From positions 1 to 64,000 of the IMG/VR virus record IMGVR_UViG_3300034050_000451: DNA of 64,000 nt; one strand, given 5' to 3'. Below, in pieces: positions 270-29,200 of the stretch (position 1 is the first letter of the stretch; each line of letters starts with the position of its first letter). The notes beneath the pieces are model-generated. The model made no database searches. It was given only the letters and a program-made list of their open reading frames with translations, and was not told the DNA's origin. The position numbers were made by a program, and so were the translations under genes.

Positions 270-869
270 TTAAACAATATCTTTCGATTCTATTAATGTA
301 TATGTAAACGATTTACCATGTATTGCACCTGATTTTCTCGTAATAACCATAAATTCTTCAAAATCAGCTGCTTTTTTGAATACTTGACATCCTTCAGACC
401 AATTTTCAACATAAGTTGAATCTGCTCCAGCTTTGTGGATGTTGATACCAAAGATACCTTCTTGGATTTTGGTTTCATCATAGTTCATATCTCTATTAGC
501 ATCTCTATAAACCTTAACCGGCTTTTGTTGTTTAAGTGCTTCGTATTTACCTTGATGTAATCCCAATGTATGTGAACCTCTATATTGACCCGGAACTAAA
601 CGAGCAACTCCAGCTGCATTATGATATTCTTTAACTCCCTTTGTACCAGGGTCGGTTGTGTTTACCCATTCTTTGTAAATCCAATTACCACCATCTTTAT
701 ATGATACTGAAATTGCATCATCAAATACGTTAGTAACCTTTGTACCGGTTGATGAATTTCTGATACCTACGATGTTTAAATCAAATCCTTTGTTAGAAGC
801 ATCTTCAAACCAAACGTATCCTTTTGATTTAACTGCTTTTTCAATTTGTTCTTTTGTGTACTTTGCCAT
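270..869 (-). CDS. L,D-transpeptidase (YkuD)-like cysteine peptidoglycan enzyme
   Basis: GINIHKAGADSTYVENWSEGCQVF fits the H...S-x-G-C catalytic signature of the YkuD fold. No signal peptide. Confidence 0.6.
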   Translation of the reverse strand: MAKYTKEQIEKAVKSKGYVWFEDASNKGFDLNIVGIRNSSTGTKVTNVFDDAISVSYKDGGNWIYKEWVNTTDPGTKGVKEYHNAAGVARLVPGQYRGSHTLGLHQGKYEALKQQKPVKVYRDANRDMNYDETKIQEGIFGINIHKAGADSTYVENWSEGCQVFKKAADFEEFMVITRKSGAIHGKSFTYTLIESKDIV

Positions 870-901: not shown

Positions 902-2575
902 TTAGTACGAAATTGTTGTACTATTAGAATAACCGGTATTAATTAAGTAGTAATTTGAACTTCCACCACTTGTTGGATTATTTATTATAATTGAGGATGT
1001 TCCTATATAGGTAGGGCGTAAATCAGTAGTTGATGAATTTATTATATTATATTGTGATTGGGTAAATAATCTAACATTTGGTAAAGAATTTTCCCATATA
1101 GATTTCATCCCAACTTTTTTCATATGAATATAATAAACATCAGATACAGTTACTTCACCATCATTATTTACATCGTACTTATAATAATCTAATCCATTAA
1201 ATGAATTACTAATAACTTTGTACATTATAGAATTAATATCACTGGTACTTAGTTGTGTTGTAGGTGTTGGAATATCATATTGAATATACCATTCGGTTGC
1301 TGGATTGGTTGATTGAGAAAATGAATAATATCCAGAAGAGTTAGTATAAACTGTTTGATGTAAAACCCATGGAGTAAAATCGTTAATATAATCAAATTCT
1401 ATAACATAAGGTAAAGATGTATTTCCTAAATCATTCCATTTACCACCTGTAACAAATTGTGTATAATCTTCACTGGGTGAGTTATTAGGTTCTCCGGAAT
1501 TCCAATTTGTGTATTGATTTAATTTATATCGATATGCATATAAGTTATATGTTCTATCAATTTCATCGGCTGTTATAGCTCTATTGAATATTTGATAATC
1601 ACCTAATCTAAAATTACCATAAGCTCCAGAACCCATATTAGTAACATCACTTAATCCAAATGCGAAATATTGTCCGTTTCCCGAATACACATACGGAACA
1701 TCTCTAGTAAAATTAGTACTTCCAAAATTTACATTATTTAAATATCCTTTCATTGATGCCCCATCATAAGTAATAGAAACCAAATGCCAAGCGTTTAATG
1801 TAATAGATGTACTTAATTGAGTAATTCCACTACCATTCCAAAATCCAACTCTAAGGGTATTACTTCCAGTGATTTCCATTATTGATTCATGCCAACCTGA
1901 TGTAGGACTACCAACACCTAATTCCGATGATATAACTCCATTTCCGGTTGGATATATCCAAGCCATTATAGTTATTTTATTATTCGAAAATTTGGATGCT
2001 AAATTATTTGTTATTGCGTATTGATTAGTTCCATTGAATGTTAAATATTTCCCACCAGTACTTGAGTATGATGGTGTATTGTATAATGTAGAATTAATAC
2101 CAGATACAATATCAGTTAGTGTGGTTCCTGATGTATAAGAAGAAACATCATAATCAGCAACCAATCCATCAGTTACTTTAGTTTCTGTCCAACGAAATCC
2201 ACCAGCTGCTTCCGAATAAGTATATCCAGAAACTCTATCTTGATAATATCCAATCCAACCAGATGGCCATGTATTAAATAAGAAATTGTTCTCAGCTGAA
2301 TTAGATACGGTAGCTAAGTGACCTCCCATATTTTCACAAGCAACCTTTGCATTAGTCCAAGTCATTGAACCAGTAGAACGATAGTAAGAGTGTCCGTTAT
2401 AATTGGTTTGTGATGTAAACCCAGTAAGAGTTGGTGTAGTACGTTTATATAATTTTACAGCAACATTTTGAGCTGGTAATCCACCCGCATTATACATATA
2501 ACCCGAATATGTAAATGTTTGAGCAAATACAATATTGGATATTATTAATAATAACAGGGTGAGATATCTTCTCAT
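902..2575 (-). CDS. secreted dockerin-bearing lectin: Ig-like domain interrupted by a C-type lectin, itself interrupted by a LamG/ConA-like domain
   Basis: Signal peptide MRRYL...IVFA|Q; the start at 2575 abuts the upstream stop. CTLD halves HSYY..TWTNAKVACENMGGHLATV..WIG and YTNWNSGEPNN..WND. LamG core ITIMAWIYP..WHLVSITYDG..YQIFNRAITADEI. Dockerin YDVNNDGEVTVSD. Confidence 0.75.
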   Translation of the reverse strand: MRRYLTLLLLIISNIVFAQTFTYSGYMYNAGGLPAQNVAVKLYKRTTPTLTGFTSQTNYNGHSYYRSTGSMTWTNAKVACENMGGHLATVSNSAENNFLFNTWPSGWIGYYQDRVSGYTYSEAAGGFRWTETKVTDGLVADYDVSSYTSGTTLTDIVSGINSTLYNTPSYSSTGGKYLTFNGTNQYAITNNLASKFSNNKITIMAWIYPTGNGVISSELGVGSPTSGWHESIMEITGSNTLRVGFWNGSGITQLSTSITLNAWHLVSITYDGASMKGYLNNVNFGSTNFTRDVPYVYSGNGQYFAFGLSDVTNMGSGAYGNFRLGDYQIFNRAITADEIDRTYNLYAYRYKLNQYTNWNSGEPNNSPSEDYTQFVTGGKWNDLGNTSLPYVIEFDYINDFTPWVLHQTVYTNSSGYYSFSQSTNPATEWYIQYDIPTPTTQLSTSDINSIMYKVISNSFNGLDYYKYDVNNDGEVTVSDVYYIHMKKVGMKSIWENSLPNVRLFTQSQYNIINSSTTDLRPTYIGTSSIIINNPTSGGSSNYYLINTGYSNSTTISY

Positions 2576-2576
2576 A

Positions 2577-3026
2577 TTACATTTGGTTAATAGCACTTAT
2601 TAATGATTTTTTTAATGCAGCTGAAAACGCTGATTTTTCAAATGGAATATTTTCATCTTGCAATTCAATAAATGTAGATTTTACATCAGTCTTACTTTCA
2701 CCAATTCCAGTATATACTTTACCATTAATAATTAAATCAACAGTCACAATAGTAACTTTTCTTTTCTTTTCAAATGGTCCAATTGAAATACTTGTTGTAG
2801 GTGCCTCAATACTCTTAACAACAACCATTACTGATTCACCATCTTCACATATACTATATTTTTCAGATAGAATTTCTTCAGTTATTTGTTTAACACCTAA
2901 TGTAAATCTTTTAGGATTTATATTTTCAATTTTAGCAAGACTCTCTACATTTTTAACAGTGTAGCATTTTTGTCCATAAGTTAATGATGTGATTAACATC
3001 AAAGATAGTAATAATAATTTTTTCAT
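2577..3026 (-). CDS. secreted compact CsgG-like protein (paralog of 4603..5322)
   Basis: Signal peptide MKKLLLL..LTYG|Q; likely start 3026. Shares LGV..I..E.L, TG.GE..T.K and F..S...A.KK.L with the CsgG-like gene. Confidence 0.55.
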   Translation of the reverse strand: MKKLLLLSLMLITSLTYGQKCYTVKNVESLAKIENINPKRFTLGVKQITEEILSEKYSICEDGESVMVVVKSIEAPTTSISIGPFEKKRKVTIVTVDLIINGKVYTGIGESKTDVKSTFIELQDENIPFEKSAFSAALKKSLISAINQM

Positions 3027-3027
3027 T

Positions 3028-4245
3028 TTATAAAAGTGCTTTAGCACCAAGTAATACTTGGTAGTTTATAGCATCACTCTTAAATTGTTGAACACCACTA
3101 AAACTGATGTTCATTTTAAATTTCTGAGTTAGCTTGTAATCAATTGCAACAAATGGAACTGCTAATAGTCCCGATTGATACCACATGCCTTCATAATAAT
3201 ATACAAATGGTGAATATACTGTAACAAACATCAATGTAGTACTCATTTTTTTTCCTACATCGAAATTACCAACAACTCCGCCTAAAGTTGATAAACTTTG
3301 GAATTTGGATTCACCAATATTACCAGTAGTATAATTTACTCCCAACGTTGCTGTTATTTTTTTTATTTTATACGATTCCATTATCGATGTTGTATTAAAA
3401 TAATCCTTTTCAAAATTCAACATAGATGAATTTGCAACTATTGATGTTAAGTTTTTACGTCTCCAAGCTGCAAATAGTGTTATACAAGAATTATCAATTG
3501 CAGTAGTATAATTTACCAAAGCCCCTTTAGCAAATGTATTCTCAGTATTTGATGTGATAAAACTCATATTAATTTTAAGTTGTTGTGGTTCATTACCAGA
3601 AGCACTTGATATAGTAACAATATCACCAGTCATCATAATATTACCACGTTTAACAGCTGCTACTTTAGCTTTAACCTGAGATGAATTAGATGATGAAGAT
3701 GATACAGCCTCTTCAGCTTTTTCTTCACCTGTTTTTTCTTCCGATTCTCCTTTTGATTTAGTTGATTGCGATGAACTACCAGATGTACCATTTTTATCAT
3801 CTGATTTATTGCCGTTAGATGCGACTTTTTCATTACTCTGAACTGTACCTTGTATTGCTGAACCAGCTGCTCCACTTATAGATGAAAGTGATGACATGGT
3901 TGACATAACGCTTGTTAACACTGCTATATTATTAGCTGCAACCGTTACATTTAAATTGGTACTTTGTGCTATACCAACACCACCACAAGGGCCGGAACCT
4001 TGCGGATTACTCGCATTAACTTGATTAATCCAACTTTCTAATGCACCGGATTGTAATTGTGTTTGAGTAAAACTTTGAATTTGCCCAGAATATATTAATG
4101 ATACGCTACCATTTGGGCTATTAATAAAAATATCTTTGGATTTTAAGGTACATGGGTCTGTAAATGTATATGAGAACCCTTGTCCTAACACCACCATAGT
4201 AGAGAACAAAAAACTTATTGTTATTAAAAGTTTTTTAATTTTCAT
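3028..4245 (-). CDS. secreted protein with probable C-terminal outer-membrane beta-barrel
   Basis: Signal peptide MKIKK..VVLG|Q; likely start 4245. N-domain with two Cys, Ser/Lys/Glu-rich linker, then about 200 aa of alternating amphipathic strands ending INYQVLLGAKALL. Confidence 0.55.
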   Translation of the reverse strand: MKIKKLLITISFLFSTMVVLGQGFSYTFTDPCTLKSKDIFINSPNGSVSLIYSGQIQSFTQTQLQSGALESWINQVNASNPQGSGPCGGVGIAQSTNLNVTVAANNIAVLTSVMSTMSSLSSISGAAGSAIQGTVQSNEKVASNGNKSDDKNGTSGSSSQSTKSKGESEEKTGEEKAEEAVSSSSSNSSQVKAKVAAVKRGNIMMTGDIVTISSASGNEPQQLKINMSFITSNTENTFAKGALVNYTTAIDNSCITLFAAWRRKNLTSIVANSSMLNFEKDYFNTTSIMESYKIKKITATLGVNYTTGNIGESKFQSLSTLGGVVGNFDVGKKMSTTLMFVTVYSPFVYYYEGMWYQSGLLAVPFVAIDYKLTQKFKMNISFSGVQQFKSDAINYQVLLGAKALL

Positions 4246-4597
4246 CTTGCGAATCCAATGTATTAGATAAAGATACGCCATCCTCTTCATCTACCTTTTG
4301 GATTAACATTTTGTCTCTATCTTCAGAGTTGAACCAATAATCTATAACTTTATTTAAGTTACCAACAAAGGCACCTAATAAAATTAATAACATTTCTTTC
4401 CAGTCTTGTCCAATTTCTACACCAAAAAATACACCAGAGTTGATTCCAACAATAATTAAGGTAAATAACCCTAATATAATTGCGGTAATTCTCCAACGAT
4501 TATTTTGCATTTGTTGCAACATAAAATAGAAACGATTTTTATCATCTACTTTAACATAATCAGATTTACCACCGAAAAATTCACTTATTTTGCCCAT
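4235..4597 (-). CDS. two-TM membrane protein, holin-like
   Basis: Two hydrophobic helices (ITAIILGLFTLIIVGINSGVFFG; MLLILLGAFVG), then IDYWFNS and an acidic tail. Confidence 0.5.
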   Translation of the reverse strand: MGKISEFFGGKSDYVKVDDKNRFYFMLQQMQNNRWRITAIILGLFTLIIVGINSGVFFGVEIGQDWKEMLLILLGAFVGNLNKVIDYWFNSEDRDKMLIQKVDEEDGVSLSNTLDSQDEN

Positions 4598-4602
4598 TAT
4601 AT

Positions 4603-5322
4603 TTAACTTTTAAATATTCCCTTTTTAATCATTTTTGAAACAACTCTAGATGCTCCAGTTTCAAGAGCTTTCTTAGTTGATATACCAATAGTTGATTGGT
4701 TAAATTTAATGTCATCAACACCATCTAATAATGATGCAGTTTTAACTGTACTTGCTTCACCCAAACCACTACCGGTAATAATTTCACCAGTTTCAGCATC
4801 AACGAATCTAACCTGTAAACCCAAACGAGTTGTTTGAGTTGTTTTTGAACCATCAGTCATTTTGATTTGTTCATCTTCGGATACTGAAAAGTCATATACC
4901 TCAATATAAACGAAGTATTTTGCTAAAATAACATTACCCTTCACTTCTATCTTATTACTTGATATACCCTTATCAGATGCCTTATCCTGTGCAATCATTT
5001 TTTGTTTAATCTCCTCACGGTCCTCAGTAAACTTAAATCTATCTGTTGACTCTAAGAATTCTAAAACAATATTAGCAACACCAAGCCCAACTCTCTTATC
5101 CTTTAACTCAGGATACATTTCGTAAAGTTCTTCGTTAATACCAATTTTTAAAACTTGAATTGGTAAAACGATATCACCATCATAGTCACCTACAACTGCA
5201 ATAGATTGTTTTTTTTCAAAATCAGCTTTATATTCTTCGGTTTTAATAGTTCCAATTGTTTGTGCATTACTAACAATAGAAAATAATAAAATTGAAGAAA
5301 TTATTAATATTAATTTTTTCAT
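4603..5322 (-). CDS. CsgG/HfaB-like secretion-channel fold protein
   Basis: Signal peptide ..VSNA|Q. LGVANIVLEFLESTDRFKFTEDRE, AKYFVYIEVYDF, LGLQVRFVDAETGEII and KKALETGASRVV follow the CsgG family layout. No lipobox Cys. Confidence 0.7.
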   Translation of the reverse strand: MKKLILIISSILLFSIVSNAQTIGTIKTEEYKADFEKKQSIAVVGDYDGDIVLPIQVLKIGINEELYEMYPELKDKRVGLGVANIVLEFLESTDRFKFTEDREEIKQKMIAQDKASDKGISSNKIEVKGNVILAKYFVYIEVYDFSVSEDEQIKMTDGSKTTQTTRLGLQVRFVDAETGEIITGSGLGEASTVKTASLLDGVDDIKFNQSTIGISTKKALETGASRVVSKMIKKGIFKS

Positions 5323-5323
5323 A

Positions 5324-5647
5324 TTACCAAGAATCCTCTTCTTTTGGTTTAGCAGGTGCTGCAGCTGGTGCAGGTTTTTCTACAATTGTTTTTTCTTTAA
5401 TAATTGTATTTGTACCACCCGATTGTTTTTGTTGATTAGTGTTATTATTTTGTAGATTGATAATTACAGGTGCAGCTGGAGCAGCTTGTTCTGTTTTAGT
5501 TTCTTCTTTATCATCTCCACCATTAAATAGAGTTGTTGTAACCCAAGTTCCACCTGCTAATACAGCAGTTGATAGAGTTCCAATAATTGTTTTCTTTAAA
5601 CCTGACCAAGTTCCTTCTGATTCGGGTGCGTTTGTTTCTTCTGACAT
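5324..5647 (-). CDS. single-pass membrane protein with Pro/Ala/Asn-rich tail
   Basis: One hydrophobic segment (IIGTLSTAVLAGGTWVTTTLF) followed by a low-complexity tail; 1 nt from the next gene. Confidence 0.6.
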   Translation of the reverse strand: MSEETNAPESEGTWSGLKKTIIGTLSTAVLAGGTWVTTTLFNGGDDKEETKTEQAAPAAPVIINLQNNNTNQQKQSGGTNTIIKEKTIVEKPAPAAAPAKPKEEDSW

Positions 5648-5692
5648 AGTATTGTTTTTTTGTTTAATTTGTTTTGAGTTGATTATAACAAT

Positions 5693-5718
5693 TATGAGGT
5701 CACATTTGTAACCTCATA
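5693..5718 (-). other. intergenic RNA hairpin without a U-tract
   Basis: Minus strand TATGAGGTTAC-AAAT-GTGACCTCATA: 11 bp with one GU pair, immediately after the stop of 5722..7626. Confidence 0.55.
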
Positions 5719-5721
5719 TTA

Positions 5722-7626
5722 TTATCTTAATATAATTTTTTTCGATAGGTTATTGGTAGTTTTTCTAAGAACTGCAACATAAACACCTGGAATTAAGTTA
5801 CCTAAACTAACTTGGTATTGGTAATTACCTTCAGGCATATTATCATTTACTACTACCCTATATTCAATACCATTAAGACCATATACTGATAACCTAACCG
5901 GTCCAAATTCTTTAACTTCAAATTTTACGTTAACATAATCATCAGTTGGGTTAGGGAATATTTGCATACCCTCTATTTCATCAATAGTAACATTTGCCAT
6001 TCTAAATACCTGTATAATACCATTTGTAGGTGTGATACTTAAATCAACACATTGATTGTTACCAGCGTATTTGTTAGTAGTCCAAAGAGGACTTGTACTC
6101 CATTGGTCTTGAGGTCTTTTTGCAATAAATTTTAAAGTTACAACATCATCACCATCTCTTAATGGTTTTATATGTGTACCACTAATATCATATCCACCCC
6201 AAGAAATTTCATTATTATTAGTATTCAAATATGTTAACCAACTTGAAGTAGCTGATTTCGATTCAATTCCTTTAAATTCCAATAGAGTATCGTTGTATTT
6301 TAATCCAAATTGTAATGAACCAACCTCAGTACCATTTGTTAATACCTTTACAGGTATATTAACTAAATTACCTTCCTGAACTGATAATGTTGGAACATTT
6401 ACTTCAATTGAAGTTGTTGGAAAATCATATTCTACCCTAGCATCAATTACATTGTAAATTTGAGATGGAACGCCAGGTTGTGGTCCTACTAAAACCTCAA
6501 TTGGAGTAATACGTGCCATACGATATCCCGTTCCATTTGCATCACCCGGTACTAATACATAGAATGTAACCGAATCAGGTTGTCCAGCAACAATATTAAA
6601 CGTAAAGTTAGTTACACCAGGAATTGTTGATGTATAATTGGTTGTTGAGCCATTAATAGTAGTATATTCAGATTGTGTAAAGAATTTTACATTTTGAACA
6701 CTATTAGGCCATGCGGTGAATCTACCAGAAATTCTACCAAATATACCATATGCATCCGATATACTTAAACCATTATCACCATTAACATCCGATGCGTAAA
6801 AATCAAATCCAGTTGGTGCTTGTGTACCTAATACATAATCTTGTACTCTTTGTGCATCTGCCGTAGATATTACATTACCAACTGATAACGTATCTCCCTG
6901 TATTTTTAATCTAACATCATAACCAGTTGTATCAATTGCAATTGCATTAAATGCAAAGTCACCATTTATATCAGTCATATCAGTTGTAACCTGAGTCCAA
7001 GCTCCACTTGGTCTAAGTTTCTTTTCTAAAGCTACAGTTAAATTCTTAGCAGCTGTTCCAGTTACGTTCTTAAATTTACCATGATAAGACATTGTTTGAG
7101 GTATAATATTACCACCAAAGTTTTGTAATGTAAGTGCGTTATCCATACCATTTTGCTTTGATGCAATTGCTGGATAAGTTACCGCTCCAAATGACATATC
7201 AGCAATAGTTGATAATGATGCAAATCCAGCTACGTGAGTTAATTTCAACTGAACAATTGGTCCATTTGGAATTTCAAAAGTAGATGAACTACCAGTATAA
7301 GTCATTGTGACAGTTACATAACCAGCAGCCGGATTATCAACATATTTTAGGTTCTGAGAAAATGTTGTATTCAATGTAGTAAGTGTGTCTACCCCAGTGA
7401 AAGCTTGTGTATCATAATAAACTCTAAACTGAAATGCTGTTATATCAGTTGTTGTATTGTTGTAAAAACATAGTCCTACATTAGTATAACCTTCAGCTAC
7501 CGTACCAGCTAAATAATTTGAATCAAGTGTTATAAAAACACCAGAAGTTGTTGGCGTTGGGCAAGTTTGTGAATACCCAAAGATTGGTACTAATGATACC
7601 AGCAGTAAAAATAATAGTTTTTTCAT
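5722..7626 (-). CDS. T9SS-cargo scaffold: cohesin - Ig - dockerin - cohesin - Por secretion C-terminal sorting domain
   Basis: Signal peptide ..FGYS|Q. Cohesin-like ITAFQFRVYYD and VNIPVKV..VGSLQFGLKYNDTLLEF..ISWGG. Dockerin ISTADA..ASDVNGDNGLSISDA. Type-A CTD IFPNPT..VYGLNG..LIPGVYVAVL..SKKIILR. Confidence 0.8.
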   Translation of the reverse strand: MKKLLFLLLVSLVPIFGYSQTCPTPTTSGVFITLDSNYLAGTVAEGYTNVGLCFYNNTTTDITAFQFRVYYDTQAFTGVDTLTTLNTTFSQNLKYVDNPAAGYVTVTMTYTGSSSTFEIPNGPIVQLKLTHVAGFASLSTIADMSFGAVTYPAIASKQNGMDNALTLQNFGGNIIPQTMSYHGKFKNVTGTAAKNLTVALEKKLRPSGAWTQVTTDMTDINGDFAFNAIAIDTTGYDVRLKIQGDTLSVGNVISTADAQRVQDYVLGTQAPTGFDFYASDVNGDNGLSISDAYGIFGRISGRFTAWPNSVQNVKFFTQSEYTTINGSTTNYTSTIPGVTNFTFNIVAGQPDSVTFYVLVPGDANGTGYRMARITPIEVLVGPQPGVPSQIYNVIDARVEYDFPTTSIEVNVPTLSVQEGNLVNIPVKVLTNGTEVGSLQFGLKYNDTLLEFKGIESKSATSSWLTYLNTNNNEISWGGYDISGTHIKPLRDGDDVVTLKFIAKRPQDQWSTSPLWTTNKYAGNNQCVDLSITPTNGIIQVFRMANVTIDEIEGMQIFPNPTDDYVNVKFEVKEFGPVRLSVYGLNGIEYRVVVNDNMPEGNYQYQVSLGNLIPGVYVAVLRKTTNNLSKKIILR

Positions 7627-8173: not shown

Positions 8174-8995
8174 TTACTTTAATAAGTTATAGTATTCTTT
8201 GAAGTGTTTGATTCTATCAGCTAATCCAATAGTACCACCATTTACTCTTTTAGTTACCGATGTTACAGTAGCATCATCAAAACCTTTATCACAAATAGAC
8301 CAAAGTTTATTTGAATCAAAGAAAAATGCAGCAGAAGCTAATGGATATTTAGTTGCTACCAAATCAGGATTTGCAACAGTATCTTCACCAATGAATTTAG
8401 CGAAGTTAGTATAGTTAGATTTACCAGTTAATTGAATATAACCACGTCCACGAAATTTAAATCCGTCTTTAGATGCTTCATCACCATTACCCATTCTTGA
8501 TGCGTAAACTTTAGATGCAATCTTTTCAGGGTTTCTAGCATATGCAGCTGCAGTTGTTGAATTAAAGTATTTTCCGAAGATTTTTACTAATCCATCTGCT
8601 GAATAGTTAACATTCTCAGTAACGGCTTTGAATCCACCACTTTCGTGTCCACATTGTGCTAAGAAATGAGCTAATCTTAGAGGAGTTGTAATATTGAATT
8701 TAGAAGCAGTGTCTGGAATTTGAGCAATTACAGAATCAGGAACGTGTCCTTTAAGAGCTGCCAATTTAAATGAAGATGCTGGTACAGCAACAGAAGGAGT
8801 TGGAGTACTTGCACCCAATCCCATCTTTTCCCAAGTAGCATCACCAACGATACCATCAGCAGTTAATCCATTTTTTGTTTGCCAAGCTTTTACAGCTGAT
8901 TCAGTACCAGCACCAAAAACTCCATCAGCGGTTAAACCTAATTTTGCTTGTAATTTTTTTACATTTTCGTTATTATCACCTTTTTTAACTAACAT
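8174..8995 (-). CDS. endolysin: N-terminal peptidoglycan-binding domain plus glycoside hydrolase family 19
   Basis: VKAWQTKNGLTADGIVGDATW (PG_binding_1); RLAHFLAQCGHESGGF, FRGRGYIQLTGKSNY and TKRVNGG (GH19). Confidence 0.9.
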   Translation of the reverse strand: MLVKKGDNNENVKKLQAKLGLTADGVFGAGTESAVKAWQTKNGLTADGIVGDATWEKMGLGASTPTPSVAVPASSFKLAALKGHVPDSVIAQIPDTASKFNITTPLRLAHFLAQCGHESGGFKAVTENVNYSADGLVKIFGKYFNSTTAAAYARNPEKIASKVYASRMGNGDEASKDGFKFRGRGYIQLTGKSNYTNFAKFIGEDTVANPDLVATKYPLASAAFFFDSNKLWSICDKGFDDATVTSVTKRVNGGTIGLADRIKHFKEYYNLLK

Positions 8996-9904: not shown

Positions 9905-11914
9905 TTATGATTTGTAAACTTCATCATTTGCTGTTTTCAATACTTTAGCAAATCGTTTATCCAATGTCATTTCAAATTTAATCTGTCCACCATACCCAAC
10001 ACCATCTTCTCTAACTTTAATTTCAGCCAATGGAATTATCTTTCCACCCACTTCAGCTTGATATCCTAAAAATGGAGGAGGACCTGTTTCAGCACTCAAC
10101 TTTTCTTTTATCATATCGTAATCAGATGTTCCAAATATGTTTTTCATAATAGCTTTATCTAATGAATTTGAACCAATTGCCATAGATTCTTCACCATCAG
10201 AAACAGCTTTGAGTGGAAATTCAGAACGAATCTCATTTAACATACCTTCTTTCATTTTTGGATTTTCCGTAATTGCCTTTATTGCATTTGATTGGAATTC
10301 TTTATGGATTTTATCATTTTCCATAATATATTGTTTAGCTATATCATTTCCACCATCTGCTAATGTTTTAATACTTGCTAATATCACTTTAGATTTAGCT
10401 CTACTTCCTTTACCTTTAATAAGGTCATTTAATGCATCTGCAAATGTAGTTCCCTTTTCATCAAATATAGTTTTTAACTTTACAGACTCATCTGAACCAC
10501 TAGCTAATAATTTTTCAATTTCTGATTTTAGGTTTGTACCAGTTTCACTTAATCTAGCTCTTTGATTTTCTTTATAAACATTTTGGTTTATGTTATCTGG
10601 TAAATCAGAATCCCATTCCATAAATTTACCAGCACCAGAATTTAAAAAGTTTACTTCAGTTGATTTTTTCAAAGAAACCTCATCTAATATCTCATCACCA
10701 TTTTCAGTTTTTATCTTAATATACATATCAGTTGAGAATCCTTTGTTTTTACCATAATCTGATAATCCCAATGATTCAACATCATCTTTAGTATCCCAAG
10801 CAGTTGCAACTATTTTTGAGTTTGGGTATTCTTTTGTAATTCTATTTAAAATAGCCTGTCTATTATTTCTAGCGGATTGAATCCAACTCTTTGTTATAAT
10901 ACGACTTCCTTCAGTTTTTAATTTTGGATTGTTTTTTATTAACTCAGCCTCATGCGTTGATAATGAATCAGTAAATTCATTAAATTCATCAGCATTCATA
11001 GATGTACCCATCATCGTCATTAACTCACCGGCCTGTGCAGATATTTGGCCTTGTCCTCCAGGTAAATCACTATAATGTGTCCATTTTGTACCATCTCCAG
11101 TTGGTTTTGTATTCATCATTCTTTCCAATGCAGTTAAATACTTTTTAGGAAATTTAGGATTTTCAATTAATGATGCTGGTAACTTATATGGTTGAGGTGG
11201 AATCGGATTTGCTATTTTTTTATTTTTAATATCAAATTCCTCATCGCTTGGTTGAATACTTTTATTAAACTCCTCACTTTCAATTGAATTTATTTTAGTA
11301 AGTGTTTTATCTTTACCAGCTATTTCTCTCTTAGGAGATGCCATTTCTTTTTCAGCAGTATCCTTAGTTGGTTGATACGCAGGGTCATTAGGTGATAACC
11401 CAGCTCTATATGAATCACCACCCTGTCCAGCAAATACAGCAGGTTGTGGTGGTTCCGCTTCAGCAGGTGCTTCGCCAGCCTTTCCAGCTTCAACATCAGC
11501 TTTATCTTCCTTTTCTTTTTCTATATTTCTATTAGGTTGTCCTTCACCACCTAATTCATTATTTATTTTTTCTCTTTCAGGTGTTCCATCAGCAGGTAAT
11601 GCTCTTTCAGCCGCTTCTCTACCAGGTTGGTCTTTAGCTAATCTAAGTAATGAACCAACTAAACCTTCTTTATCCTTACCATCTCTATCTTTGTATTTAA
11701 CGGTCTTATTAAGTGCGGGTGATGAATAGTGTTTCTCTTCACTAGCTTCAGTAAGATTTTGAATAAGTTCATTTTTTATATGAGTATATCCCCACTCATC
11801 TAATATCTCAGATATAAGATAAATGTGTGATTGTTTACTCAATATAGGATAACCTTCATCGGAACGATAGGCTAACTCATGCAATAAGTCTAAAAGGAAG
11901 TCGTTTTTCTCCAT
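9905..11914 (-). CDS. large late protein with possible PD-(D/E)xK nuclease-like C-terminal domain
   Basis: Start probably MEKNDF at 11914, since the track start overlaps the polymerase gene and a late motif sits at 11944-11952. Acidic Pro/Ala linker; AQAGELM...STDMYI...DEVSLKK. Confidence 0.5.
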   Translation of the reverse strand: MEKNDFLLDLLHELAYRSDEGYPILSKQSHIYLISEILDEWGYTHIKNELIQNLTEASEEKHYSSPALNKTVKYKDRDGKDKEGLVGSLLRLAKDQPGREAAERALPADGTPEREKINNELGGEGQPNRNIEKEKEDKADVEAGKAGEAPAEAEPPQPAVFAGQGGDSYRAGLSPNDPAYQPTKDTAEKEMASPKREIAGKDKTLTKINSIESEEFNKSIQPSDEEFDIKNKKIANPIPPQPYKLPASLIENPKFPKKYLTALERMMNTKPTGDGTKWTHYSDLPGGQGQISAQAGELMTMMGTSMNADEFNEFTDSLSTHEAELIKNNPKLKTEGSRIITKSWIQSARNNRQAILNRITKEYPNSKIVATAWDTKDDVESLGLSDYGKNKGFSTDMYIKIKTENGDEILDEVSLKKSTEVNFLNSGAGKFMEWDSDLPDNINQNVYKENQRARLSETGTNLKSEIEKLLASGSDESVKLKTIFDEKGTTFADALNDLIKGKGSRAKSKVILASIKTLADGGNDIAKQYIMENDKIHKEFQSNAIKAITENPKMKEGMLNEIRSEFPLKAVSDGEESMAIGSNSLDKAIMKNIFGTSDYDMIKEKLSAETGPPPFLGYQAEVGGKIIPLAEIKVREDGVGYGGQIKFEMTLDKRFAKVLKTANDEVYKS

Positions 11915-11951
11915 AATTTCTGATTCTCTGAAACAATATTTTATATAAATA

Positions 11952-13217
11952 TTAAAGTTTCGAGTAATCAGTTCCCCAGCTAGCATTAATGGGGAATCCA
12001 CCACCTTCAGCTATCTCTTTTAACTTTTTAGCTTGAGATACATCGGAATTAGCAGGATATGAAAATAAGAATGAATCGTATGTGTATAGGGAAAGTTCTA
12101 TATCGGTATCTTTGATAAATTCCAATATTTTAGCTACCCTTTCCATATTTAATTCGGTTTCGGTCGCTTGAAGTAGGTAGTTGAACAATTTTTGCGGATT
12201 GTTTCCTTCAATCCAATCTAAGGGGATTCTCCTATGTTGTGTTTGAAGATATCCAGCTTTGGTACTCTTATCCCACAACTTCTCAATGAACTCCTTAACA
12301 CCCTTATAATAAGGTATTTGCTCAAACTCCTCAGGTATACCACCATATAGTAATTGGAACGTAATTCCTTTACCCTCACCATACTCACAACCATATTGGT
12401 CAGCTAACCATTGGTGTACGGATGTTTTGGGTAATTCGTAACCAATCAACTTACCAATAATACGTGGATGATACGCATCATAATCCATTTGTAGGAATAT
12501 GTGGTTTGGTTTTGGGATAAACACCTCTCTCGTACCATCGGATTTGTTTAGGGCAGAGAAGTTGATTCCACCAAATCGGTTGGATGGACGGGATGTAATG
12601 GTGTATGGGTTGTATTGGGTGTAAACGATATCGTTGTGTAAATGTTTAGAAGCTTGAGGCCATCTATCAAGAAATTTTTCCCTATCGACCCGAACACCAA
12701 AATGTTCTATATCTGAAAGAAGGGGAATCATCGAATCTCCAACCCAATCATTCTCTATACCAATAGTAAAAGTAGAAGATATCACTCTAAGATACTCACC
12801 CCATTTCATAATAGGTGCTATCTTGCCCAAATTATCTCGTATACCTCTTCGGGTATAGTGAGTTATAAATGGTTGGTCCTCAAAACCTATCGGATATAAT
12901 TTATTGTGTTGAAAAAATGCATCAGATTGTAAATCATTTAGGTTTTGTAAACCCAAATTACATTGAAGTAATCCCTTTTTGTTGATTACCCATTTTGCTT
13001 CCTTAGAAGTAGTCAAATCAATCGTAGGAGTCTTACAATCAATATGGTTAAATGGTACAATAAAGTCCTTATCATCAAATCTAACATATAGAAATGATAA
13101 TTTGTTATGTATAGGATGCTTTTCCAAATCAGACCATATTGGAATGATTATGGATGTCTTAGTATTCCATAAATTTAAAAACTCCGTTACTTCAGTTTGT
13201 GACTCTACTATAACCAT
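11952..13217 (-). CDS. compact, divergent family A DNA polymerase-like protein
   Basis: TITSRPSNRFGGINF; motif A QMDYDAYHPRII; motif B KGITFQLLYG; motif C LYTYDSFLF; C-terminal FPINASWGTDY. Confidence 0.8.
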   Translation of the reverse strand: MVIVESQTEVTEFLNLWNTKTSIIIPIWSDLEKHPIHNKLSFLYVRFDDKDFIVPFNHIDCKTPTIDLTTSKEAKWVINKKGLLQCNLGLQNLNDLQSDAFFQHNKLYPIGFEDQPFITHYTRRGIRDNLGKIAPIMKWGEYLRVISSTFTIGIENDWVGDSMIPLLSDIEHFGVRVDREKFLDRWPQASKHLHNDIVYTQYNPYTITSRPSNRFGGINFSALNKSDGTREVFIPKPNHIFLQMDYDAYHPRIIGKLIGYELPKTSVHQWLADQYGCEYGEGKGITFQLLYGGIPEEFEQIPYYKGVKEFIEKLWDKSTKAGYLQTQHRRIPLDWIEGNNPQKLFNYLLQATETELNMERVAKILEFIKDTDIELSLYTYDSFLFSYPANSDVSQAKKLKEIAEGGGFPINASWGTDYSKL

Positions 13218-26245: not shown

Positions 26246-29200
26246 TTATTTTATCAAAGATTTAATCATTTCTTTTAATTCATCAATTTGTTTTTGCTGA
26301 GAATTGATTATTTCGGTTTGTTCTTTAATACCTTCAACTAAAAGAGGAACTACTTTAGCGTAGTTTACAGTTAAGTAATCTTCTCCAGATTTGGAACCTA
26401 CAATATTATTATTTTTATCAGTTTCCGTATCAAATGGTGCTAATGTCACAATTTCAGGTAAAACTTCTTGTACTTCTTGTGCTGATAAACCTAATTGTCT
26501 TTTTTCGTTTTTGTATCCGAATGATTTTGCTAAATCATTTTCAACATAATAGAATCCATTCAATTTAGAGATTTTATCTAAAGCGTTTTCAATAGAACCA
26601 ACTTTAGTTTTTAATCTTTCATCAGAGTAGTATGCAATAACATCACCCTGTGCGTAAACCCAGTTATAAGAATAAACATAATCATAGTTTGTTCTATTCA
26701 ATCTGGAAGTACCATTCGGAGCCAAATAATATGCAGTATCACTGTTGTGGTAATATACGTTACCATATACTCTATTATTGAAATATGCAATAGGGTTACC
26801 ACTCTCTCGTCCGATATATGCTACGGAAACTGACTGGCCAGTAGTATTATCATGTATTCTTACATATGAGTTTGCATTATTATCATTTGAATCTAATCTT
26901 AAGTTGATATCATTAAATGAGTTAATACTCATCGAATCACTAAACGAACCATTTAAATCAGTAGATGCGATACCATGATTTGAATAAGTGTCATAATTCG
27001 CGTTCCAGTCAAATGACATGTATGCCGTTTTATGGAATGAATTTGACCAAGTACCATATCCCTGTGCTCTACCTTTATTAGTATCTGAACCGAAGTATGT
27101 TGTATCAGTTATGGTTGTATTGAAACGAGATGTTGATGCAAAATCACCATAGTATCCAGAGTTATTACCATCGTAATATATACCACCATAAACTGTACCT
27201 GTTCCGAAATTTGAATAACCAGAATAGTTGTTTGAATTTAGATATCTAACCCATCCGCTGAAACTTCCTCCGGTAATATTTCTTTGATAAATTTCATTTG
27301 CATTATCTTCCCATCCATATGCCAATTGAGTTCCCCAATAGTTACTTGAGTTTGCATGTCTCATATTTACCTGGAACCACCAAGTTCCAGATGGACCACC
27401 ATTATATTTATCTTCACCAAACGTAAATGAACTTATTGGAGTTCGATTGAAATCTGAAACCCAGTTTCCTTCTCCATAACCACTCATATCATTATGAGCT
27501 TTTAATGCAGTCTTAGTTATATTTAAACGAGATGTTGATGCTGGGTCTGCATAATATGCACTATCAGCCGAATCATAATAAATTCCAGCATACATTGCTC
27601 CACTATTTCCATCATTCACATCAAGCATAGGTACAGTTCTCCAAGTACCAGCATTTGGCCAAGATTGACGGAATCGTAAATTTCCAATTGGACCACCTAC
27701 CAACTGCCAACCATATGCACTATTGTATGCATTGGTGTAGTGATATGCTTGAGTACCTACCCAATGTGAAGTACCAGATGGTTGATTTGATGGGTTTGAC
27801 CAAGAATCAATGAATCCACTACCCCATGTCATCATAGTGTTGAAGTCAGTTGTACCCCAACCCATACTTCCAACCCAATAATTAGAGTCGCCCGTATGAA
27901 TAAATCTTGGGATATTGTATTTCCATGTTCCTTTGGTTCCTTCTACTGTTCTTGCGGTAAATCCATTAACGCTGGTGCTTCTATCACCTGCATAATTACC
28001 ATAGTATCCAGTATCATCATTATCATAGAATATAGGTGCCTGAACTGAAGTTCTGAACCAACCACGTGATGATATTGCCGCAAAAGTTGTACCATAGTTC
28101 ATTACCAATAAACCGTGGTCATTTAAGAATCCAGCTTGTCCTCCAGCATTAGGATGTGACCAAGATAATCCATATAAGTTACCAGTACCAGTACCATCAA
28201 TTGCTAATTTATATGCATTACCCATTGCAAATATACCCTGATATCTAACAGATGTATAAACACCTACAATTGATTGTCCATAGTTGTTATCTAAGTAAAG
28301 GTTTTCATTTCCATCAATTCGGATACCACCATTTGCTACTACATATGATAATCTAGCAGTTCCATTAGGGTCTAAATAATATGCAGTATTTGCATAATCA
28401 TAGTAAAGATTAGCTCTTAAATTTTTATTACCACCACCAGGTCCAATGTAAACATCACCACCATCATAATAGTTTAATTCTAACGGGTCACTACCTCTAC
28501 CATTTACAGTATCAGCATATACGTTTCTACCAATGAAACCATAACTCGTATCTCCCGCCCAATATAAATTATCATAATTAATAGCGTTTATACGAGATGT
28601 TGATGCAAAATCACCATAGTATCCCGTATTATCCGAATCATAAAATATTGGTGCTCTTAATGAGTTACCACCCGTAGCGTAGTTGTTAAATAATACGGTA
28701 TTATTTGGATACATTTCCATATTAGTAACTCTAGTACCAGATGTATTTGTATTATAGAAATACAAATCACCACCATCACTAAATCTCATATATGCCTGTC
28801 CGTGTGCGGTATTTATTCTACCAAATCCGTTTGGTGAACCATTATTATTAGTTACGTTATATCCAAATCCACCCCAGTTCCACGTTACACCAGGTTCAGA
28901 TACCCACATTCTTAAATTAATTTCACCTGCACCAGCACCATTGTTTCCAGACAATAATCTAACTCCAATTTGAGAATCCCCATGTCCACCATTTACTTGA
29001 AATGTACCATATAAGTAAGTGTTACTATTGGGGTTCATATAATATGTAGTATCATCTATATCATAGAATATAGTAGCTCTTGATGAACCATATGCGTAAT
29101 GATTACCAGCAGTATCATATCCACCAACTGTTCTACCGGCAGTTTCAGAATACATATGGAATGCATCAGTACTACCTAACAATTGAGTTGATGTACGTTT

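What the first reader, a model, noticed from the sequence alone, without database searches (positions are those of the whole stretch)
902..2575. Russian-doll domain nesting: Ig contains C-type lectin, which contains LamG
Seen: the Ig-like module that is contiguous in the scaffold (SYHGKFKNVTGTAAKNLTVALEKK-LRPSGA-WTQVTTDMTDINGDFAF) is split here (TYSGYMYNAGGLPAQNVAVKLYKR...about 350 aa...WVLHQTVYTNSSGYYSF). The insert is a C-type lectin, itself split by an about 220-aa LamG domain between FRW and YTNW. The lectin keeps EPN and WND motifs. Established: EPN marks Man/Glc/GlcNAc-type Ca2+-dependent binding. Inference: two sequential insertions into loops stacked two glycan-binding heads on a dockable base, suggesting a swappable cargo slot.
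Basis: partly seen in the sequence, partly recalled or inferred. Interest (0 to 1): 0.65.

Follow-up and report, generated by a model that had tools for sequence, protein, structure and literature searches.

The report
Phage lectin with doubly nested domains
A secreted protein of a 271-kb phage carries a sugar-binding LamG domain inside a C-type lectin domain inside a small beta-sandwich. Related phages put other binding domains in the same sandwich loop, and the protein's tail is predicted to plug into a neighbouring phage-encoded cohesin anchor.

Summary
Gene 902-2575 (minus strand; 557 aa from Met8 of the ORF) encodes these parts in order:
- a signal peptide;
- a beta-sandwich split at one hairpin;
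- a C-type lectin domain (CTLD) in that hairpin, with EPN, WND and all five Ca2+-site-2 residues;
- a ~220-aa LamG/ConA-like jelly roll inside the CTLD long loop;
- a single-loop dockerin-like module and a small C-terminal domain.

Pfam, a PDB profile search and an AlphaFold2 model (pLDDT 89.9) agree. Whole solved CTLDs superpose across both halves (Z 16, 120-125 of about 130 residues).

The "Ig" is more precisely transthyretin/prealbumin-like, and that assignment rests on sub-threshold matches.

The "swappable slot" idea holds up. At the orthologous gene of the same cassette, related phages carry CTLD only, PA14, or an unannotated ~187-aa domain. A further 211-aa insert was seen on a partial cassette. 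All sit at the identical junction. Cultured Flavobacterium phage immuto has the CTLD-only form.

A complex prediction supports docking on the cohesin of the neighbouring T9SS-tailed scaffold protein (ipSAE 0.61; best control 0.00).

The order of the two insertions is not resolved, and the tree indicates mosaic exchange. Glycan binding, surface display and biological role remain inferred.

Verdict: new variant of known kinds; interest about 0.6.

The parts
902..2575 (-). Gene for the nested lectin protein. It is 557 aa from Met8, with the stop at 902-904; the open frame extends upstream to a GTG at 2596.
   Evidence: Homologues of 555-558 aa begin at the equivalent Met.
2519..2575 (-). Predicted Sec signal peptide, ORF residues 8-26 (basic start, hydrophobic core, ending ..FAQ).
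   Evidence: Read from the sequence; this is inference. The region is a low-pLDDT helix in the model.
2426..2518 (-). Beta-sandwich N-terminal half: two strands, ORF residues 27-57.
   Evidence: BLASTP to the contiguous module of P0122. HMM matches in all cargo variants. pLDDT 90-96.
2183..2425 (-). CTLD N-terminal part (beta1, two helices, WIG strand, ..FRW), ORF residues 58-138.
   Evidence: Pfam Lectin_C, profile positions 2-59 of 107, 38 bits against a cut-off of 22.6. PDB profile hits. VIA alignments.
1523..2182 (-). LamG / concanavalin-A-like jelly roll plus a return helix, ORF residues 139-358, inserted in the CTLD long-loop hairpin.
   Evidence: Pfam Laminin_G_3, E 4e-15. Model residues 134-344 against 5hon_B: Z 20.7, 190 of 206 residues.
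1385..1522 (-). CTLD C-terminal part, ORF residues 359-404. It holds YTNW, EPN (1484-1492), the Glu seven residues on, WND (1430-1438) and the last strand.
   Evidence: PDB profile hits to MBP-C, DC-SIGN and CD23. The motif residues are invariant in alignment A1.
1256..1384 (-). Beta-sandwich C-terminal half: three strands, ORF residues 405-447.
   Evidence: BLASTP E 1e-13 to P0122. HMM matches. pLDDT 88-97.
1103..1255 (-). Dockerin-like three-helix module, ORF residues 448-498, with one canonical DxNxDGxxxxxD loop (1139-1174).
   Evidence: Pfam Dockerin_1 is sub-threshold at 13.1 bits. Loop residues are invariant. Predicted cohesin contacts lie on helices 1 and 3.
905..1102 (-). Small C-terminal alpha/beta domain, ORF residues 499-564, shared with the scaffold protein.
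   Evidence: HMM hit on P0122, E 4e-25, and nowhere else in the genome. Model.
5722..7626 (-). Scaffold protein P0122 (634 aa). Parts in order: signal peptide, N-terminal domain, contiguous sandwich (6892-7107), dockerin-like module plus C-terminal domain (6535-6870), cohesin (6007-6408), T9SS C-terminal sorting domain (5731-5961).
   Evidence: Pfam Cohesin 43.2 bits and Por_Secre_tail 38.1 bits.. Translation.
2577..5647 (-). Five intervening cassette genes. Two encode small proteins with a predicted membrane span (5324-5647, 4235-4597). Three encode signal-peptide proteins (4603-5322, 3028-4290, 2577-3050).
   Evidence: Conserved in order in L001, L005, L008 and the contig carrying P0177. No family match.

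Best explanation
Shown or strongly supported:
- The gene encodes a phage protein built by two nested domain insertions.
- A transthyretin-like beta-sandwich carries a complete C-type lectin domain in its second hairpin.
- The CTLD keeps the five Ca2+-site-2 ligands of mannose/GlcNAc-type lectins: EPN, a Glu, and the N and D of WND.
- The CTLD in turn carries a LamG/ConA-like jelly roll in its long-loop hairpin.
- The sandwich hairpin is a natural cargo slot. Orthologous genes in related phages hold CTLD only, PA14 or unannotated domains at exactly this junction.

Supported by prediction only:
- The dockerin-like module after the sandwich binds the single cohesin of the scaffold protein encoded 3 kb upstream in the same conserved cassette.

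Inferred:
- Both proteins have Sec signal peptides, and the scaffold ends in a type IX secretion sorting domain.
- So in an infected Bacteroidota cell (probably a flavobacterium) the scaffold would be exported and surface-attached by the host T9SS.
- It would then display the lectin, giving the infected cell or its debris two phage-chosen glycan-binding heads.
- Likely purposes are adhesion to glycan-rich particles, or masking of surface glycans against further phage adsorption.
For: Architecture:
- Pfam.
- PDB profile with both CTLD halves collinear.
- AF2 model at pLDDT 89.9.
- Whole CTLD chains align over model 46-401 (Z 16.4) and LamG over 134-344 (Z 20.7).
- An ESM Atlas CTLD-only viral model superposes on 319 non-LamG residues (TM 0.88).
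- Motif residues are invariant.

Slot:
- Split relative to the contiguous module.
- Identical junction with five insert types.
- Same cassette position.
- A GEVED-domain cluster superposes on the base, so it may be a further cargo (junction not checked).

Docking:
- Cohesin and T9SS CTD are above Pfam cut-offs on the neighbour.
- The 271-kb genome holds only one cohesin, one CTD and two dockerin-type modules.
- Complex prediction ipSAE 0.61 against a best control of 0.00 (mark reached by 58 of 80 solved complexes and 2 of 110 mismatched pairs); runs agree in at least 93% of contacts; partner pLDDT at least 74. Own alignments were used, so these counts hold only roughly. Contacts lie on dockerin helices 1 and 3.
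- A lectin gene and a cohesin gene also lie close together in cultured Flavobacterium phage immuto.

T9SS substrates are defined by a Sec signal plus a CTD (PMC12618676 abstract).
Against: - No experiment bears on any of this. Sugar binding, Ca2+ dependence, export and docking are all predictions.
- The dockerin match is below Pfam's cut-off and has only one canonical Ca2+ loop.
- Cohesin-dockerin complexes are solved, so the complex score may reflect recall of the family rather than this pair.
- The scaffold has its own dockerin-like module, which could compete for the same cohesin.
- The lectin lacks a T9SS CTD, so how it would cross the outer membrane is unexplained.
- Canonical CTLD disulfides are absent: the protein has one Cys.
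- CTLD segment 111-130 (model numbering, from Met8) stays at low confidence.
- Contact between the two sandwich halves could not be inspected directly, because no coordinates or PAE were available.
- The cassette always sits next to lysis enzymes, which could point to a role in lysis instead.
Confidence: 0.6

Rival explanations
1. The protein is a virion component, such as a receptor-binding or decoration protein. Its lectin heads would bind host surface polysaccharide, and the cohesin-dockerin pair would attach it to the particle.
For: - LamG and CTLD folds are common in phage fibres and virion proteins. Examples are the cyanopodophage Pan3 tailspike (Z 18.1) and Synechococcus phage S-PM2 virion structural proteins with LamG-like folds.
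- The window also encodes giant collagen-like fibre proteins.
Against: - Both the lectin and the scaffold have N-terminal Sec-type signal peptides, and the scaffold ends in a T9SS sorting domain. Proteins assembled into virions in the cytoplasm do not normally have these.
- The cassette is about 24 kb from the fibre genes and lies next to lysis enzymes.
Confidence: 0.15
2. The cassette is an accessory part of the lysis or envelope module. The lectin would bind the host's own envelope glycans (LPS, capsule or peptidoglycan-linked sugars). That could help outer-membrane disruption, or coat debris so that progeny phage are not wasted on dead cells.
For: - In every locus examined the cassette adjoins a cell-wall hydrolase: GH19 with PG_binding, glucosaminidase, Peptidase_M15_3, or phrog_3000 with an endolysin match.
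- The cassette includes two small proteins with a predicted membrane span and three exported proteins.
Against: - No cassette protein matches a known holin, spanin or lysis family.
- A T9SS-tailed cohesin scaffold with exchangeable lectin, PA14 and possibly GEVED heads looks like adhesin display rather than lysis machinery.
- In phage immuto the genes lie among replication genes.
Confidence: 0.2
3. The apparent nesting is an artefact: a misassembly, a chimeric contig, or chance similarity of short flanks.
For: The N-terminal flank match to the scaffold alone is weak (E 1e-3).
Against: - More than 120 independent homologues from several sources share the full architecture at 66-97% identity.
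- Both flanks are recovered by HMMs in all cargo variants.
- The model is confident and its domains superpose on solved folds.
Confidence: 0.02

Closest known systems
Animal collectin / DC-SIGN-type C-type lectin carbohydrate-recognition domains (Pfam PF00059; e.g. langerin 5g6u, ASGPR 6yau, CL-K1 4yli, MBP-C)
   Same: Same double-loop fold in the model (Z 15-16.4, rmsd 1.6-2.6 over 111-125 residues). The EPN, Glu and WND Ca2+-site-2 residues are conserved.
   Different: The domain is interrupted by a 220-aa LamG in the long loop. Both canonical disulfides are missing. The beta2 region is remodelled with 7 extra residues. The domain is itself an insert in another domain, and it is encoded by a phage.
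LamG_3 / concanavalin-A-like jelly rolls (Pfam PF13385), e.g. domain 4 of Geobacillus arabinanase AbnA (5hon)
   Same: Pfam match above cut-off. Z 20.7 over 190 of 206 residues. The domain is 40-46% identical to free-standing LamG_3 domains in metagenomic proteins.
   Different: Here it is an internal insert with both termini emerging from a CTLD hairpin. Its ligand is unknown. The fold is also shared with the jelly-roll subdomain of clostridial neurotoxin binding domains and with trans-sialidase lectin domains. That is a fold resemblance only.
Cellulosome cohesin-dockerin assembly
   Same: There is a cohesin above the Pfam cut-off on an anchored scaffold and a dockerin-like EF-hand module on the cargo protein. 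The predicted interface uses dockerin helices 1 and 3.
   Different: The system is phage-encoded. The scaffold has one cohesin above cut-off; a second is only hinted at (E 0.058). The cargo is a lectin, PA14 or another binding domain, not an enzyme. Anchoring is by a T9SS sorting domain rather than SLH or sortase. The dockerin has a single canonical Ca2+ loop.
Flavobacterium phage vB_FspM_immuto protein immuto35A_13, annotated 'lectin C-type domain-containing protein' (MW353176)
   Same: Same base (sandwich, dockerin-like module, C-terminal domain) with a CTLD in the same hairpin; 56% identity over the shared parts. A cohesin-domain protein lies two genes downstream.
   Different: Its CTLD is uninterrupted (332 aa, no LamG). 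Its cohesin protein is 243 aa, and the annotation lists no T9SS tail.
Nested ('Russian-doll') domain insertions catalogued in structural surveys of multidomain proteins (recalled from the literature, not checked here)
   Same: A whole domain is inserted in a loop of a parent domain whose termini are adjacent, repeated at two levels.
   Different: This particular triple was not found in the paper searches. Here the outer slot is demonstrably polymorphic between orthologues.

Membership tests
C-type lectin-like domain (PF00059) | Sequence match above the curated cut-off | tested here: met
   38 bits against a cut-off of 22.6, but only profile positions 2-59 of 107. The C-terminal half is matched separately by MBP-C, DC-SIGN and CD23 chains.
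C-type lectin-like domain (PF00059) | Single double-loop fold with paired first and last strands and two helices | tested here: met
   Predicted model only. Whole CTLD chains align across model 46-401: Z 16.4, 120-125 of 129-131 residues, rmsd 2.0-2.6.
C-type lectin-like domain (PF00059) | Two conserved disulfides (C1-C4, C2-C3) | tested here: not met
   Only one Cys is present, at the helix-1 position. The other three positions are Tyr, a non-Cys residue and Ile.
Ca2+-dependent Man/GlcNAc-type CRD | Five Ca2+-site-2 ligands: the E and N of EPN, a Glu, and the N and D of WND | tested here: met
   All five are present and invariant in 37 homologues, with a one-residue shorter spacer than in MBP or CD23.
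Ca2+-dependent Man/GlcNAc-type CRD | Ca2+-dependent sugar binding | not testable with these tools
   Needs a glycan array or ITC with and without EDTA.
LamG / ConA-like (PF13385) | Sequence match above cut-off and a jelly-roll fold | tested here: met
   56.7 bits against a cut-off of 27.6. Z 20.7 to 5hon_B over 190 of 206 residues.
Type I dockerin (PF00404) | Sequence match above cut-off with two duplicated Ca2+-binding segments | tested here: not met
   13.1 bits against a cut-off of 22.9. There is only one canonical DxNxDGxxxxxD loop, and the first segment is degenerate.
Type I dockerin (PF00404) | Binds a cohesin through helices 1 and 3 | tested here: inconclusive
   Complex prediction 0.61 against a best control of 0.00, with contacts on residues 448-457 and 470-491 (numbering from Met8). 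This is a prediction, not a measurement.
Cohesin (PF00963), on the partner P0122 | Sequence match above cut-off | tested here: met
   43.2 bits against a cut-off of 24.1, full profile 1-139.
T9SS cargo (PF18962 CTD plus Sec signal), on the partner P0122 | C-terminal sorting domain above cut-off and an N-terminal signal peptide | tested here: met
   38-40 bits against a cut-off of 27. The signal peptide was read from the sequence. The lectin protein itself has no CTD.
Transthyretin / prealbumin-like sandwich (CarboxypepD_reg, SdrD_B, Transthyretin) | Sequence match above cut-off | tested here: inconclusive
   The matches are consistent but all sub-threshold: Transthyretin in 11 of 17 members, CarboxypepD_reg in 8 of 17 (best E 1e-3), SdrD_B in 6 of 17; PDB 2igl E 0.022.
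Cellulosome | Multi-cohesin scaffoldin carrying dockerin-tagged carbohydrate-active enzymes | tested here: not met
   One cohesin above cut-off. No CAZyme carries the dockerin module. Only two dockerin-type modules occur in the genome.

The most novel reading that the evidence does not exclude
Large phages of Bacteroidota carry a conserved cassette that hijacks the host type IX secretion system. It would install a phage-made cohesin anchor on the infected cell and load it, via a fast-evolving dockerin, with exchangeable glycan-binding heads: CTLD, CTLD+LamG, PA14, possibly GEVED, and others. The heads are swapped between phage lineages by recombination at one sandwich hairpin. This would be a viral, cellulosome-like surface-display system, in which the lectin possibly rides through T9SS attached to its scaffold.
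Probability: 0.3. Interest if true: 0.8.

Novelty: new variant of a known kind. Interest (0 to 1): 0.62.

Why it matters
1. It is a clean natural example of two-level domain nesting in which the outer insertion site varies between orthologues. That makes it a ready-made model for how loops become cargo slots, and a possible scaffold for protein engineering.

2. It points to an undescribed phage cassette that combines a cohesin-dockerin pair with a T9SS sorting signal. All database copies I looked up are named "hypothetical protein", and four targeted paper searches found no description. If phages decorate infected flavobacterial cells with lectins, this bears on particle attachment, superinfection exclusion and carbon cycling in waters where Bacteroidota degrade algal glycans.

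3. A cultured phage-host pair (immuto / Flavobacterium sp. LMO8) carries the CTLD-only form, so the idea can be tested directly.

Tried and rejected
- First AF2 job, shallow alignment A1 (37 rows at 66% identity or more): both CTLD halves came out below pLDDT 50. This was resolved by a 130-row alignment that added uninterrupted CTLD repeats and free LamG domains. In that alignment MAFFT scattered about 17 mid-CTLD residues of the uninterrupted rows across LamG columns. This probably explains why segment 111-130 stays at low confidence.
- My by-eye idea that the scaffold's N-terminal domain (residues 20-172) is a second cohesin is not supported. hhalign against cohesin 2 gave probability 0.2, the PDB profile search gave nothing, and Pfam Cohesin gave only E 0.058.
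- Megablast of the first 20 kb against phage records found no match.
- PHROGs gave no family for the lectin, the scaffold or the intervening genes.
- Pfam at E up to 1 gave nothing for the unannotated inserts of P0170, P0177 and P0202, or for the cassette proteins.
- Covariation of dockerin with cohesin was tried on four phage lineages. Both evolve fast (27-51% and 45-52% identity), but six pairs show no usable trend.
- I looked for recent horizontal transfer of the cargo. Cargo identity of 70-97% falls within the range of the more conserved cassette genes (63-83%), so nothing can be concluded.
- Foldseek against PDB and BFVD was dominated by the LamG domain and said nothing about the sandwich.
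- Four paper searches found nothing on phage cohesin-dockerin systems, phage T9SS cargo, or LamG-in-CTLD nesting.
- A diversity-generating-retroelement target was considered and set aside without a dedicated search. The CTLD is the canonical Ca2+-site type and its binding-site residues are invariant.
- Sequencing-run and read-laying tools were not used.
Full report
CONTEXT

The window is the first 64 kb of a 270,865-bp virus record, rated complete by CheckV and linear. GC content is about 30-35%. Other genes in the window are:
- a GH19 endolysin with a PG_binding domain;
- a second endolysin-like protein;
- pieces resembling DNA polymerase A;
- three giant proteins of 2,772-3,994 aa, two of which carry collagen repeats and one of those a Peptidase_S74 chaperone domain.

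This is therefore a jumbo tailed phage. The only cultured relatives of the gene in question are Flavobacterium phages of the genus Immutovirus. The partner protein carries a Bacteroidota-specific T9SS sorting domain. The host is thus probably a flavobacterium or another member of Bacteroidota.

NUMBERING

"ORF numbering" counts from the GTG at 2596 (564 aa). "Model numbering" counts from Met8 (557 aa), so it is ORF numbering minus 7.

THE OBSERVATION

The ORF at 902-2596 (minus strand) gives 564 aa from a GTG. Homologues are 555-558 aa and start at the equivalent of Met8.

Evidence that the sandwich is split:
- After a signal-peptide-like N-terminus, BLASTP against the neighbouring 634-aa protein P0122 (5722-7626, minus) gives two collinear matches.
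- The first pairs P0001 23-56 with P0122 174-207 (E 1e-3). The second pairs P0001 410-560 with P0122 210-366 (E 1e-13).
- So 353 residues (57-409) interrupt a module that is continuous in the neighbour.

Evidence that the insert is a split CTLD holding a LamG:
- Pfam places Lectin_C at 77-138, covering only profile positions 2-59 of 107, and Laminin_G_3 at 188-346.
- A profile of 37 family members hits solved CTLDs with both halves in the same chains and in the right order. For CD23, profile 58-112 aligns to chain 13-68 and profile 355-384 to chain 86-116. MBP-C and DC-SIGN match the second half.
- EPN, WND and the intervening Glu are invariant in the family.

A first AlphaFold2 run used a shallow alignment. 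It left both CTLD halves below pLDDT 50.

I then ran the exhaustive representative search. It returned uninterrupted CTLD repeats, free LamG domains and variants of the base. From these I built a 130-row alignment.

The second model has mean pLDDT 89.9 and pTM 0.67. Only the signal peptide and residues 111-130 (model numbering) stay at low confidence.

Structural comparisons of the second model:
- An all-against-representatives alignment shows whole CTLD chains aligned across model residues 46-401. Examples are langerin 5g6u (Z 16.4, 125 of 131 residues, rmsd 2.6), ASGPR 6yau (Z 16.4, 120 of 129, rmsd 2.0) and CL-K1 4yli (rmsd 1.6 over 114).
- The LamG aligns at 134-344. The best match is AbnA domain 4, 5hon (Z 20.7, 190 of 206 residues).
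- Only about 137 residues in the range 46-401 lie outside the LamG. The two CTLD pieces therefore close into one domain.
- The ESM Atlas holds a 327-aa viral "C-type lectin-like" cluster with 99 members. Its model superposes on 319 residues of mine spanning 10-557 (rmsd 2.4, TM 0.88 by that model). So everything except the LamG has the same arrangement as in the natural LamG-less protein.

I could not inspect coordinates or PAE. Closure of the sandwich therefore rests on three things: the homology to contiguous copies, strand assignments with pLDDT 88-97 on both halves, and the Atlas superposition.

WHAT THE "Ig" IS

The contiguous copies in the scaffold family and in P0252 give consistent but sub-threshold matches to prealbumin-like families:
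- Transthyretin in 11 of 17 members;
- CarboxypepD_reg in 8 of 17;
- SdrD_B in 6 of 17;
- the transthyretin-like protein 2igl at E 0.022.

The alignment to 2igl puts the insertion point in the hairpin between the second and third strands.

IS THE SLOT SWAPPABLE?

Yes, by comparison. HMMs of the two sandwich halves find the same flanks in proteins with different inserts:

| Insert | Length (aa) | Examples |
|---|---|---|
| CTLD + LamG | 347-349 | This protein, P0008, P0040, P0123 |
| Uninterrupted CTLD | 121-123 | P0124, immuto P0392, P0146 (which has lost EPN) |
| PA14 | 173-178 | P0160, P0200 |
| Unannotated | 186-187 | P0177, P0202 |
| Unannotated | 211 | P0170 |
| None | 0 | P0122, P0252 |

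The Atlas also holds a GEVED-domain cluster and another unannotated cluster that superpose on the base. Their junctions were not checked.

Several of these are orthologues, not just paralogues. The CTLD+LamG, CTLD-only, PA14 and 187-aa forms each sit at the same end of the same cassette. The 211-aa form (P0170) was seen only on a short contig with a partial cassette and no scaffold gene. The cassette is:
- a cohesin/T9SS scaffold of about 616-636 aa;
- two or three small proteins;
- a protein of about 236-243 aa;
- a protein of about 420-565 aa;
- a protein of about 147-157 aa, whose position relative to the cargo gene varies;
- the cargo gene.

ORDER OF EVENTS

The CTLD-only form shows that the intermediate is viable, but I cannot polarise the history.
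- On a maximum-likelihood tree of the shared, non-LamG columns, cargo types are interleaved. P0124 pairs with the nested P0084 (support 100/100). The PA14 protein P0200 pairs with the nested P0113 (100/99). The AU test rejects a single clade of LamG-bearing genes (p 1.4e-17).
- Region-by-region identities show a mosaic. P0124 matches P0084 in the signal peptide, sandwich and dock (70-97%), but its CTLD C-half is closest to the immuto type (89%).
- P0124 is not a simple deletion of the LamG. The strand region before the insert differs between the two CTLD types: 7 extra residues and a different sequence in the LamG-bearing type.
- Across lineages the cargo is much better conserved (71-97%) than the dockerin and C-terminal domain (32-48%) or the cohesin (45-52%).
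- The simplest reading is recombination at the conserved sandwich flanks, with docking parts that evolve fast.

THE DOCK

After the sandwich come three helices with one canonical DxNxDGxxxxxD loop. Its positions 1, 3, 5 and 12 are invariant. A small alpha/beta domain follows. Pfam Dockerin_1 matches only at 13.1 bits, below its cut-off.

In the whole 271-kb genome, only this protein and the scaffold carry this module. There is one cohesin and one T9SS sorting domain, both on the scaffold.

A complex prediction paired the scaffold cohesin (P0122 395-548) with the lectin's last 120 residues:
- It scored 0.61 in three runs against 0.00 for the best of three controls.
- That mark was reached by 58 of 80 solved complexes and by 2 of 110 mismatched pairs. 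My own alignments were used, so these counts hold only roughly.
- The runs agree in at least 93% of contacts, and the partner pLDDT is at least 74.
- Contacts fall on residues 448-457 and 470-491 (model numbering), which are dockerin helices 1 and 3.
- Because cohesin-dockerin complexes are solved, this shows likeness to the family. It does not show that this pair binds.

MECHANISM

Shown:
- the nested architecture;
- intact Ca2+-site-2 residues;
- a variable slot;
- a conserved cassette.

Supported by prediction:
- lectin dockerin to scaffold cohesin.

Inferred:
- Both proteins are Sec-exported.
- The scaffold is a T9SS substrate. Substrates of that system are defined by a Sec signal plus the C-terminal domain (PMC12618676 abstract).
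- The complex ends up on the surface of the infected cell and presents an EPN-type CTLD head and a LamG head.

Unexplained:
- how a lectin without a sorting domain crosses the outer membrane;
- what the five other exported or membrane cassette proteins do;
- why the cassette is always next to cell-wall hydrolases.

COMPARISON AND NOVELTY

Each domain is a known kind, and so is domain nesting. The GenBank record of phage immuto already names a "lectin C-type domain-containing protein" and a "cohesin domain-containing protein". All metagenomic copies I looked up are "hypothetical protein".

As far as four full-text searches show, the following have not been described:
- a LamG inside a CTLD;
- a polymorphic cargo slot at one sandwich hairpin;
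- a phage cassette pairing cohesin-dockerin with a T9SS tail.

I rate this a new variant of known kinds.

The Foldseek matches of the LamG to the jelly-roll subdomain of clostridial neurotoxin binding domains reflect the shared ConA-like fold only.

Noticed in passing
window 902-7626 (minus strand); also L001, L005, L008: The lectin gene closes a conserved cassette of 7-8 genes: the cohesin/T9SS scaffold, two small proteins with a predicted membrane span, three signal-peptide proteins without any family match, and the cargo gene. Between lineages the small 120-aa membrane protein is about 80% identical, whereas the 420-aa and 157-aa proteins are only 27-44% identical.
   Followed up: partly
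window 270-869 and 8174-8995; L008 2863-3381; L010 4117-4587; L011 2932-3659: In every locus examined, the cassette lies next to a cell-wall hydrolase: phrog_3000 with an endolysin match, GH19 with PG_binding_1, glucosaminidase, or Peptidase_M15_3. This suggests a link to the lysis module.
   Followed up: partly
window 26246-38029, 40104-52088, 52982-61300 (minus strand): Three giant ORFs of 3,927, 3,994 and 2,772 aa. The first two carry many collagen triple-helix repeats, and the first ends in a Peptidase_S74 intramolecular chaperone domain. They are probably very long fibres. The third was not scanned.
   Followed up: partly
window 7111-7566 (P0122 residues 20-172): The scaffold's N-terminal domain has a sub-threshold Pfam cohesin match (E 0.058). 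It shows no profile-profile similarity to the C-terminal cohesin. It could be a very divergent second cohesin or something else.
   Followed up: yes
window 2577-4290 (minus strand): Here a 420-aa ORF and a 157-aa ORF overlap by 23 bases. Relatives have a 521-565-aa gene plus a separate 141-154-aa gene, so gene lengths in this part of the cassette vary a lot between lineages.
   Followed up: no
window 9905-13217 (minus strand): Two overlapping ORFs of 699 and 421 aa. The second gives only weak, partial DNA polymerase A matches (Pfam E 1e-4, phrog_17). This may be a split or highly divergent polymerase.
   Followed up: no
proteins P0195 and P0270 (metagenomic, not in the window): Close relatives of the LamG insert (35-36% identity) are fused to a C-terminal region that looks fibrinogen-related by eye (a ..DGGGWTL.. 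motif). This is another lectin-type combination in the same sequence pool.
   Followed up: no
proteins P0127, P0129, P0133, P0134, P0148 and others (metagenomic): The CTLD halves are 38-47% identical to uninterrupted CTLDs that occur as 4-11 tandem repeats in giant metagenomic proteins of up to 6,674 aa. EPN-type CTLDs therefore appear common in this microbial and viral sequence pool.
   Followed up: partly
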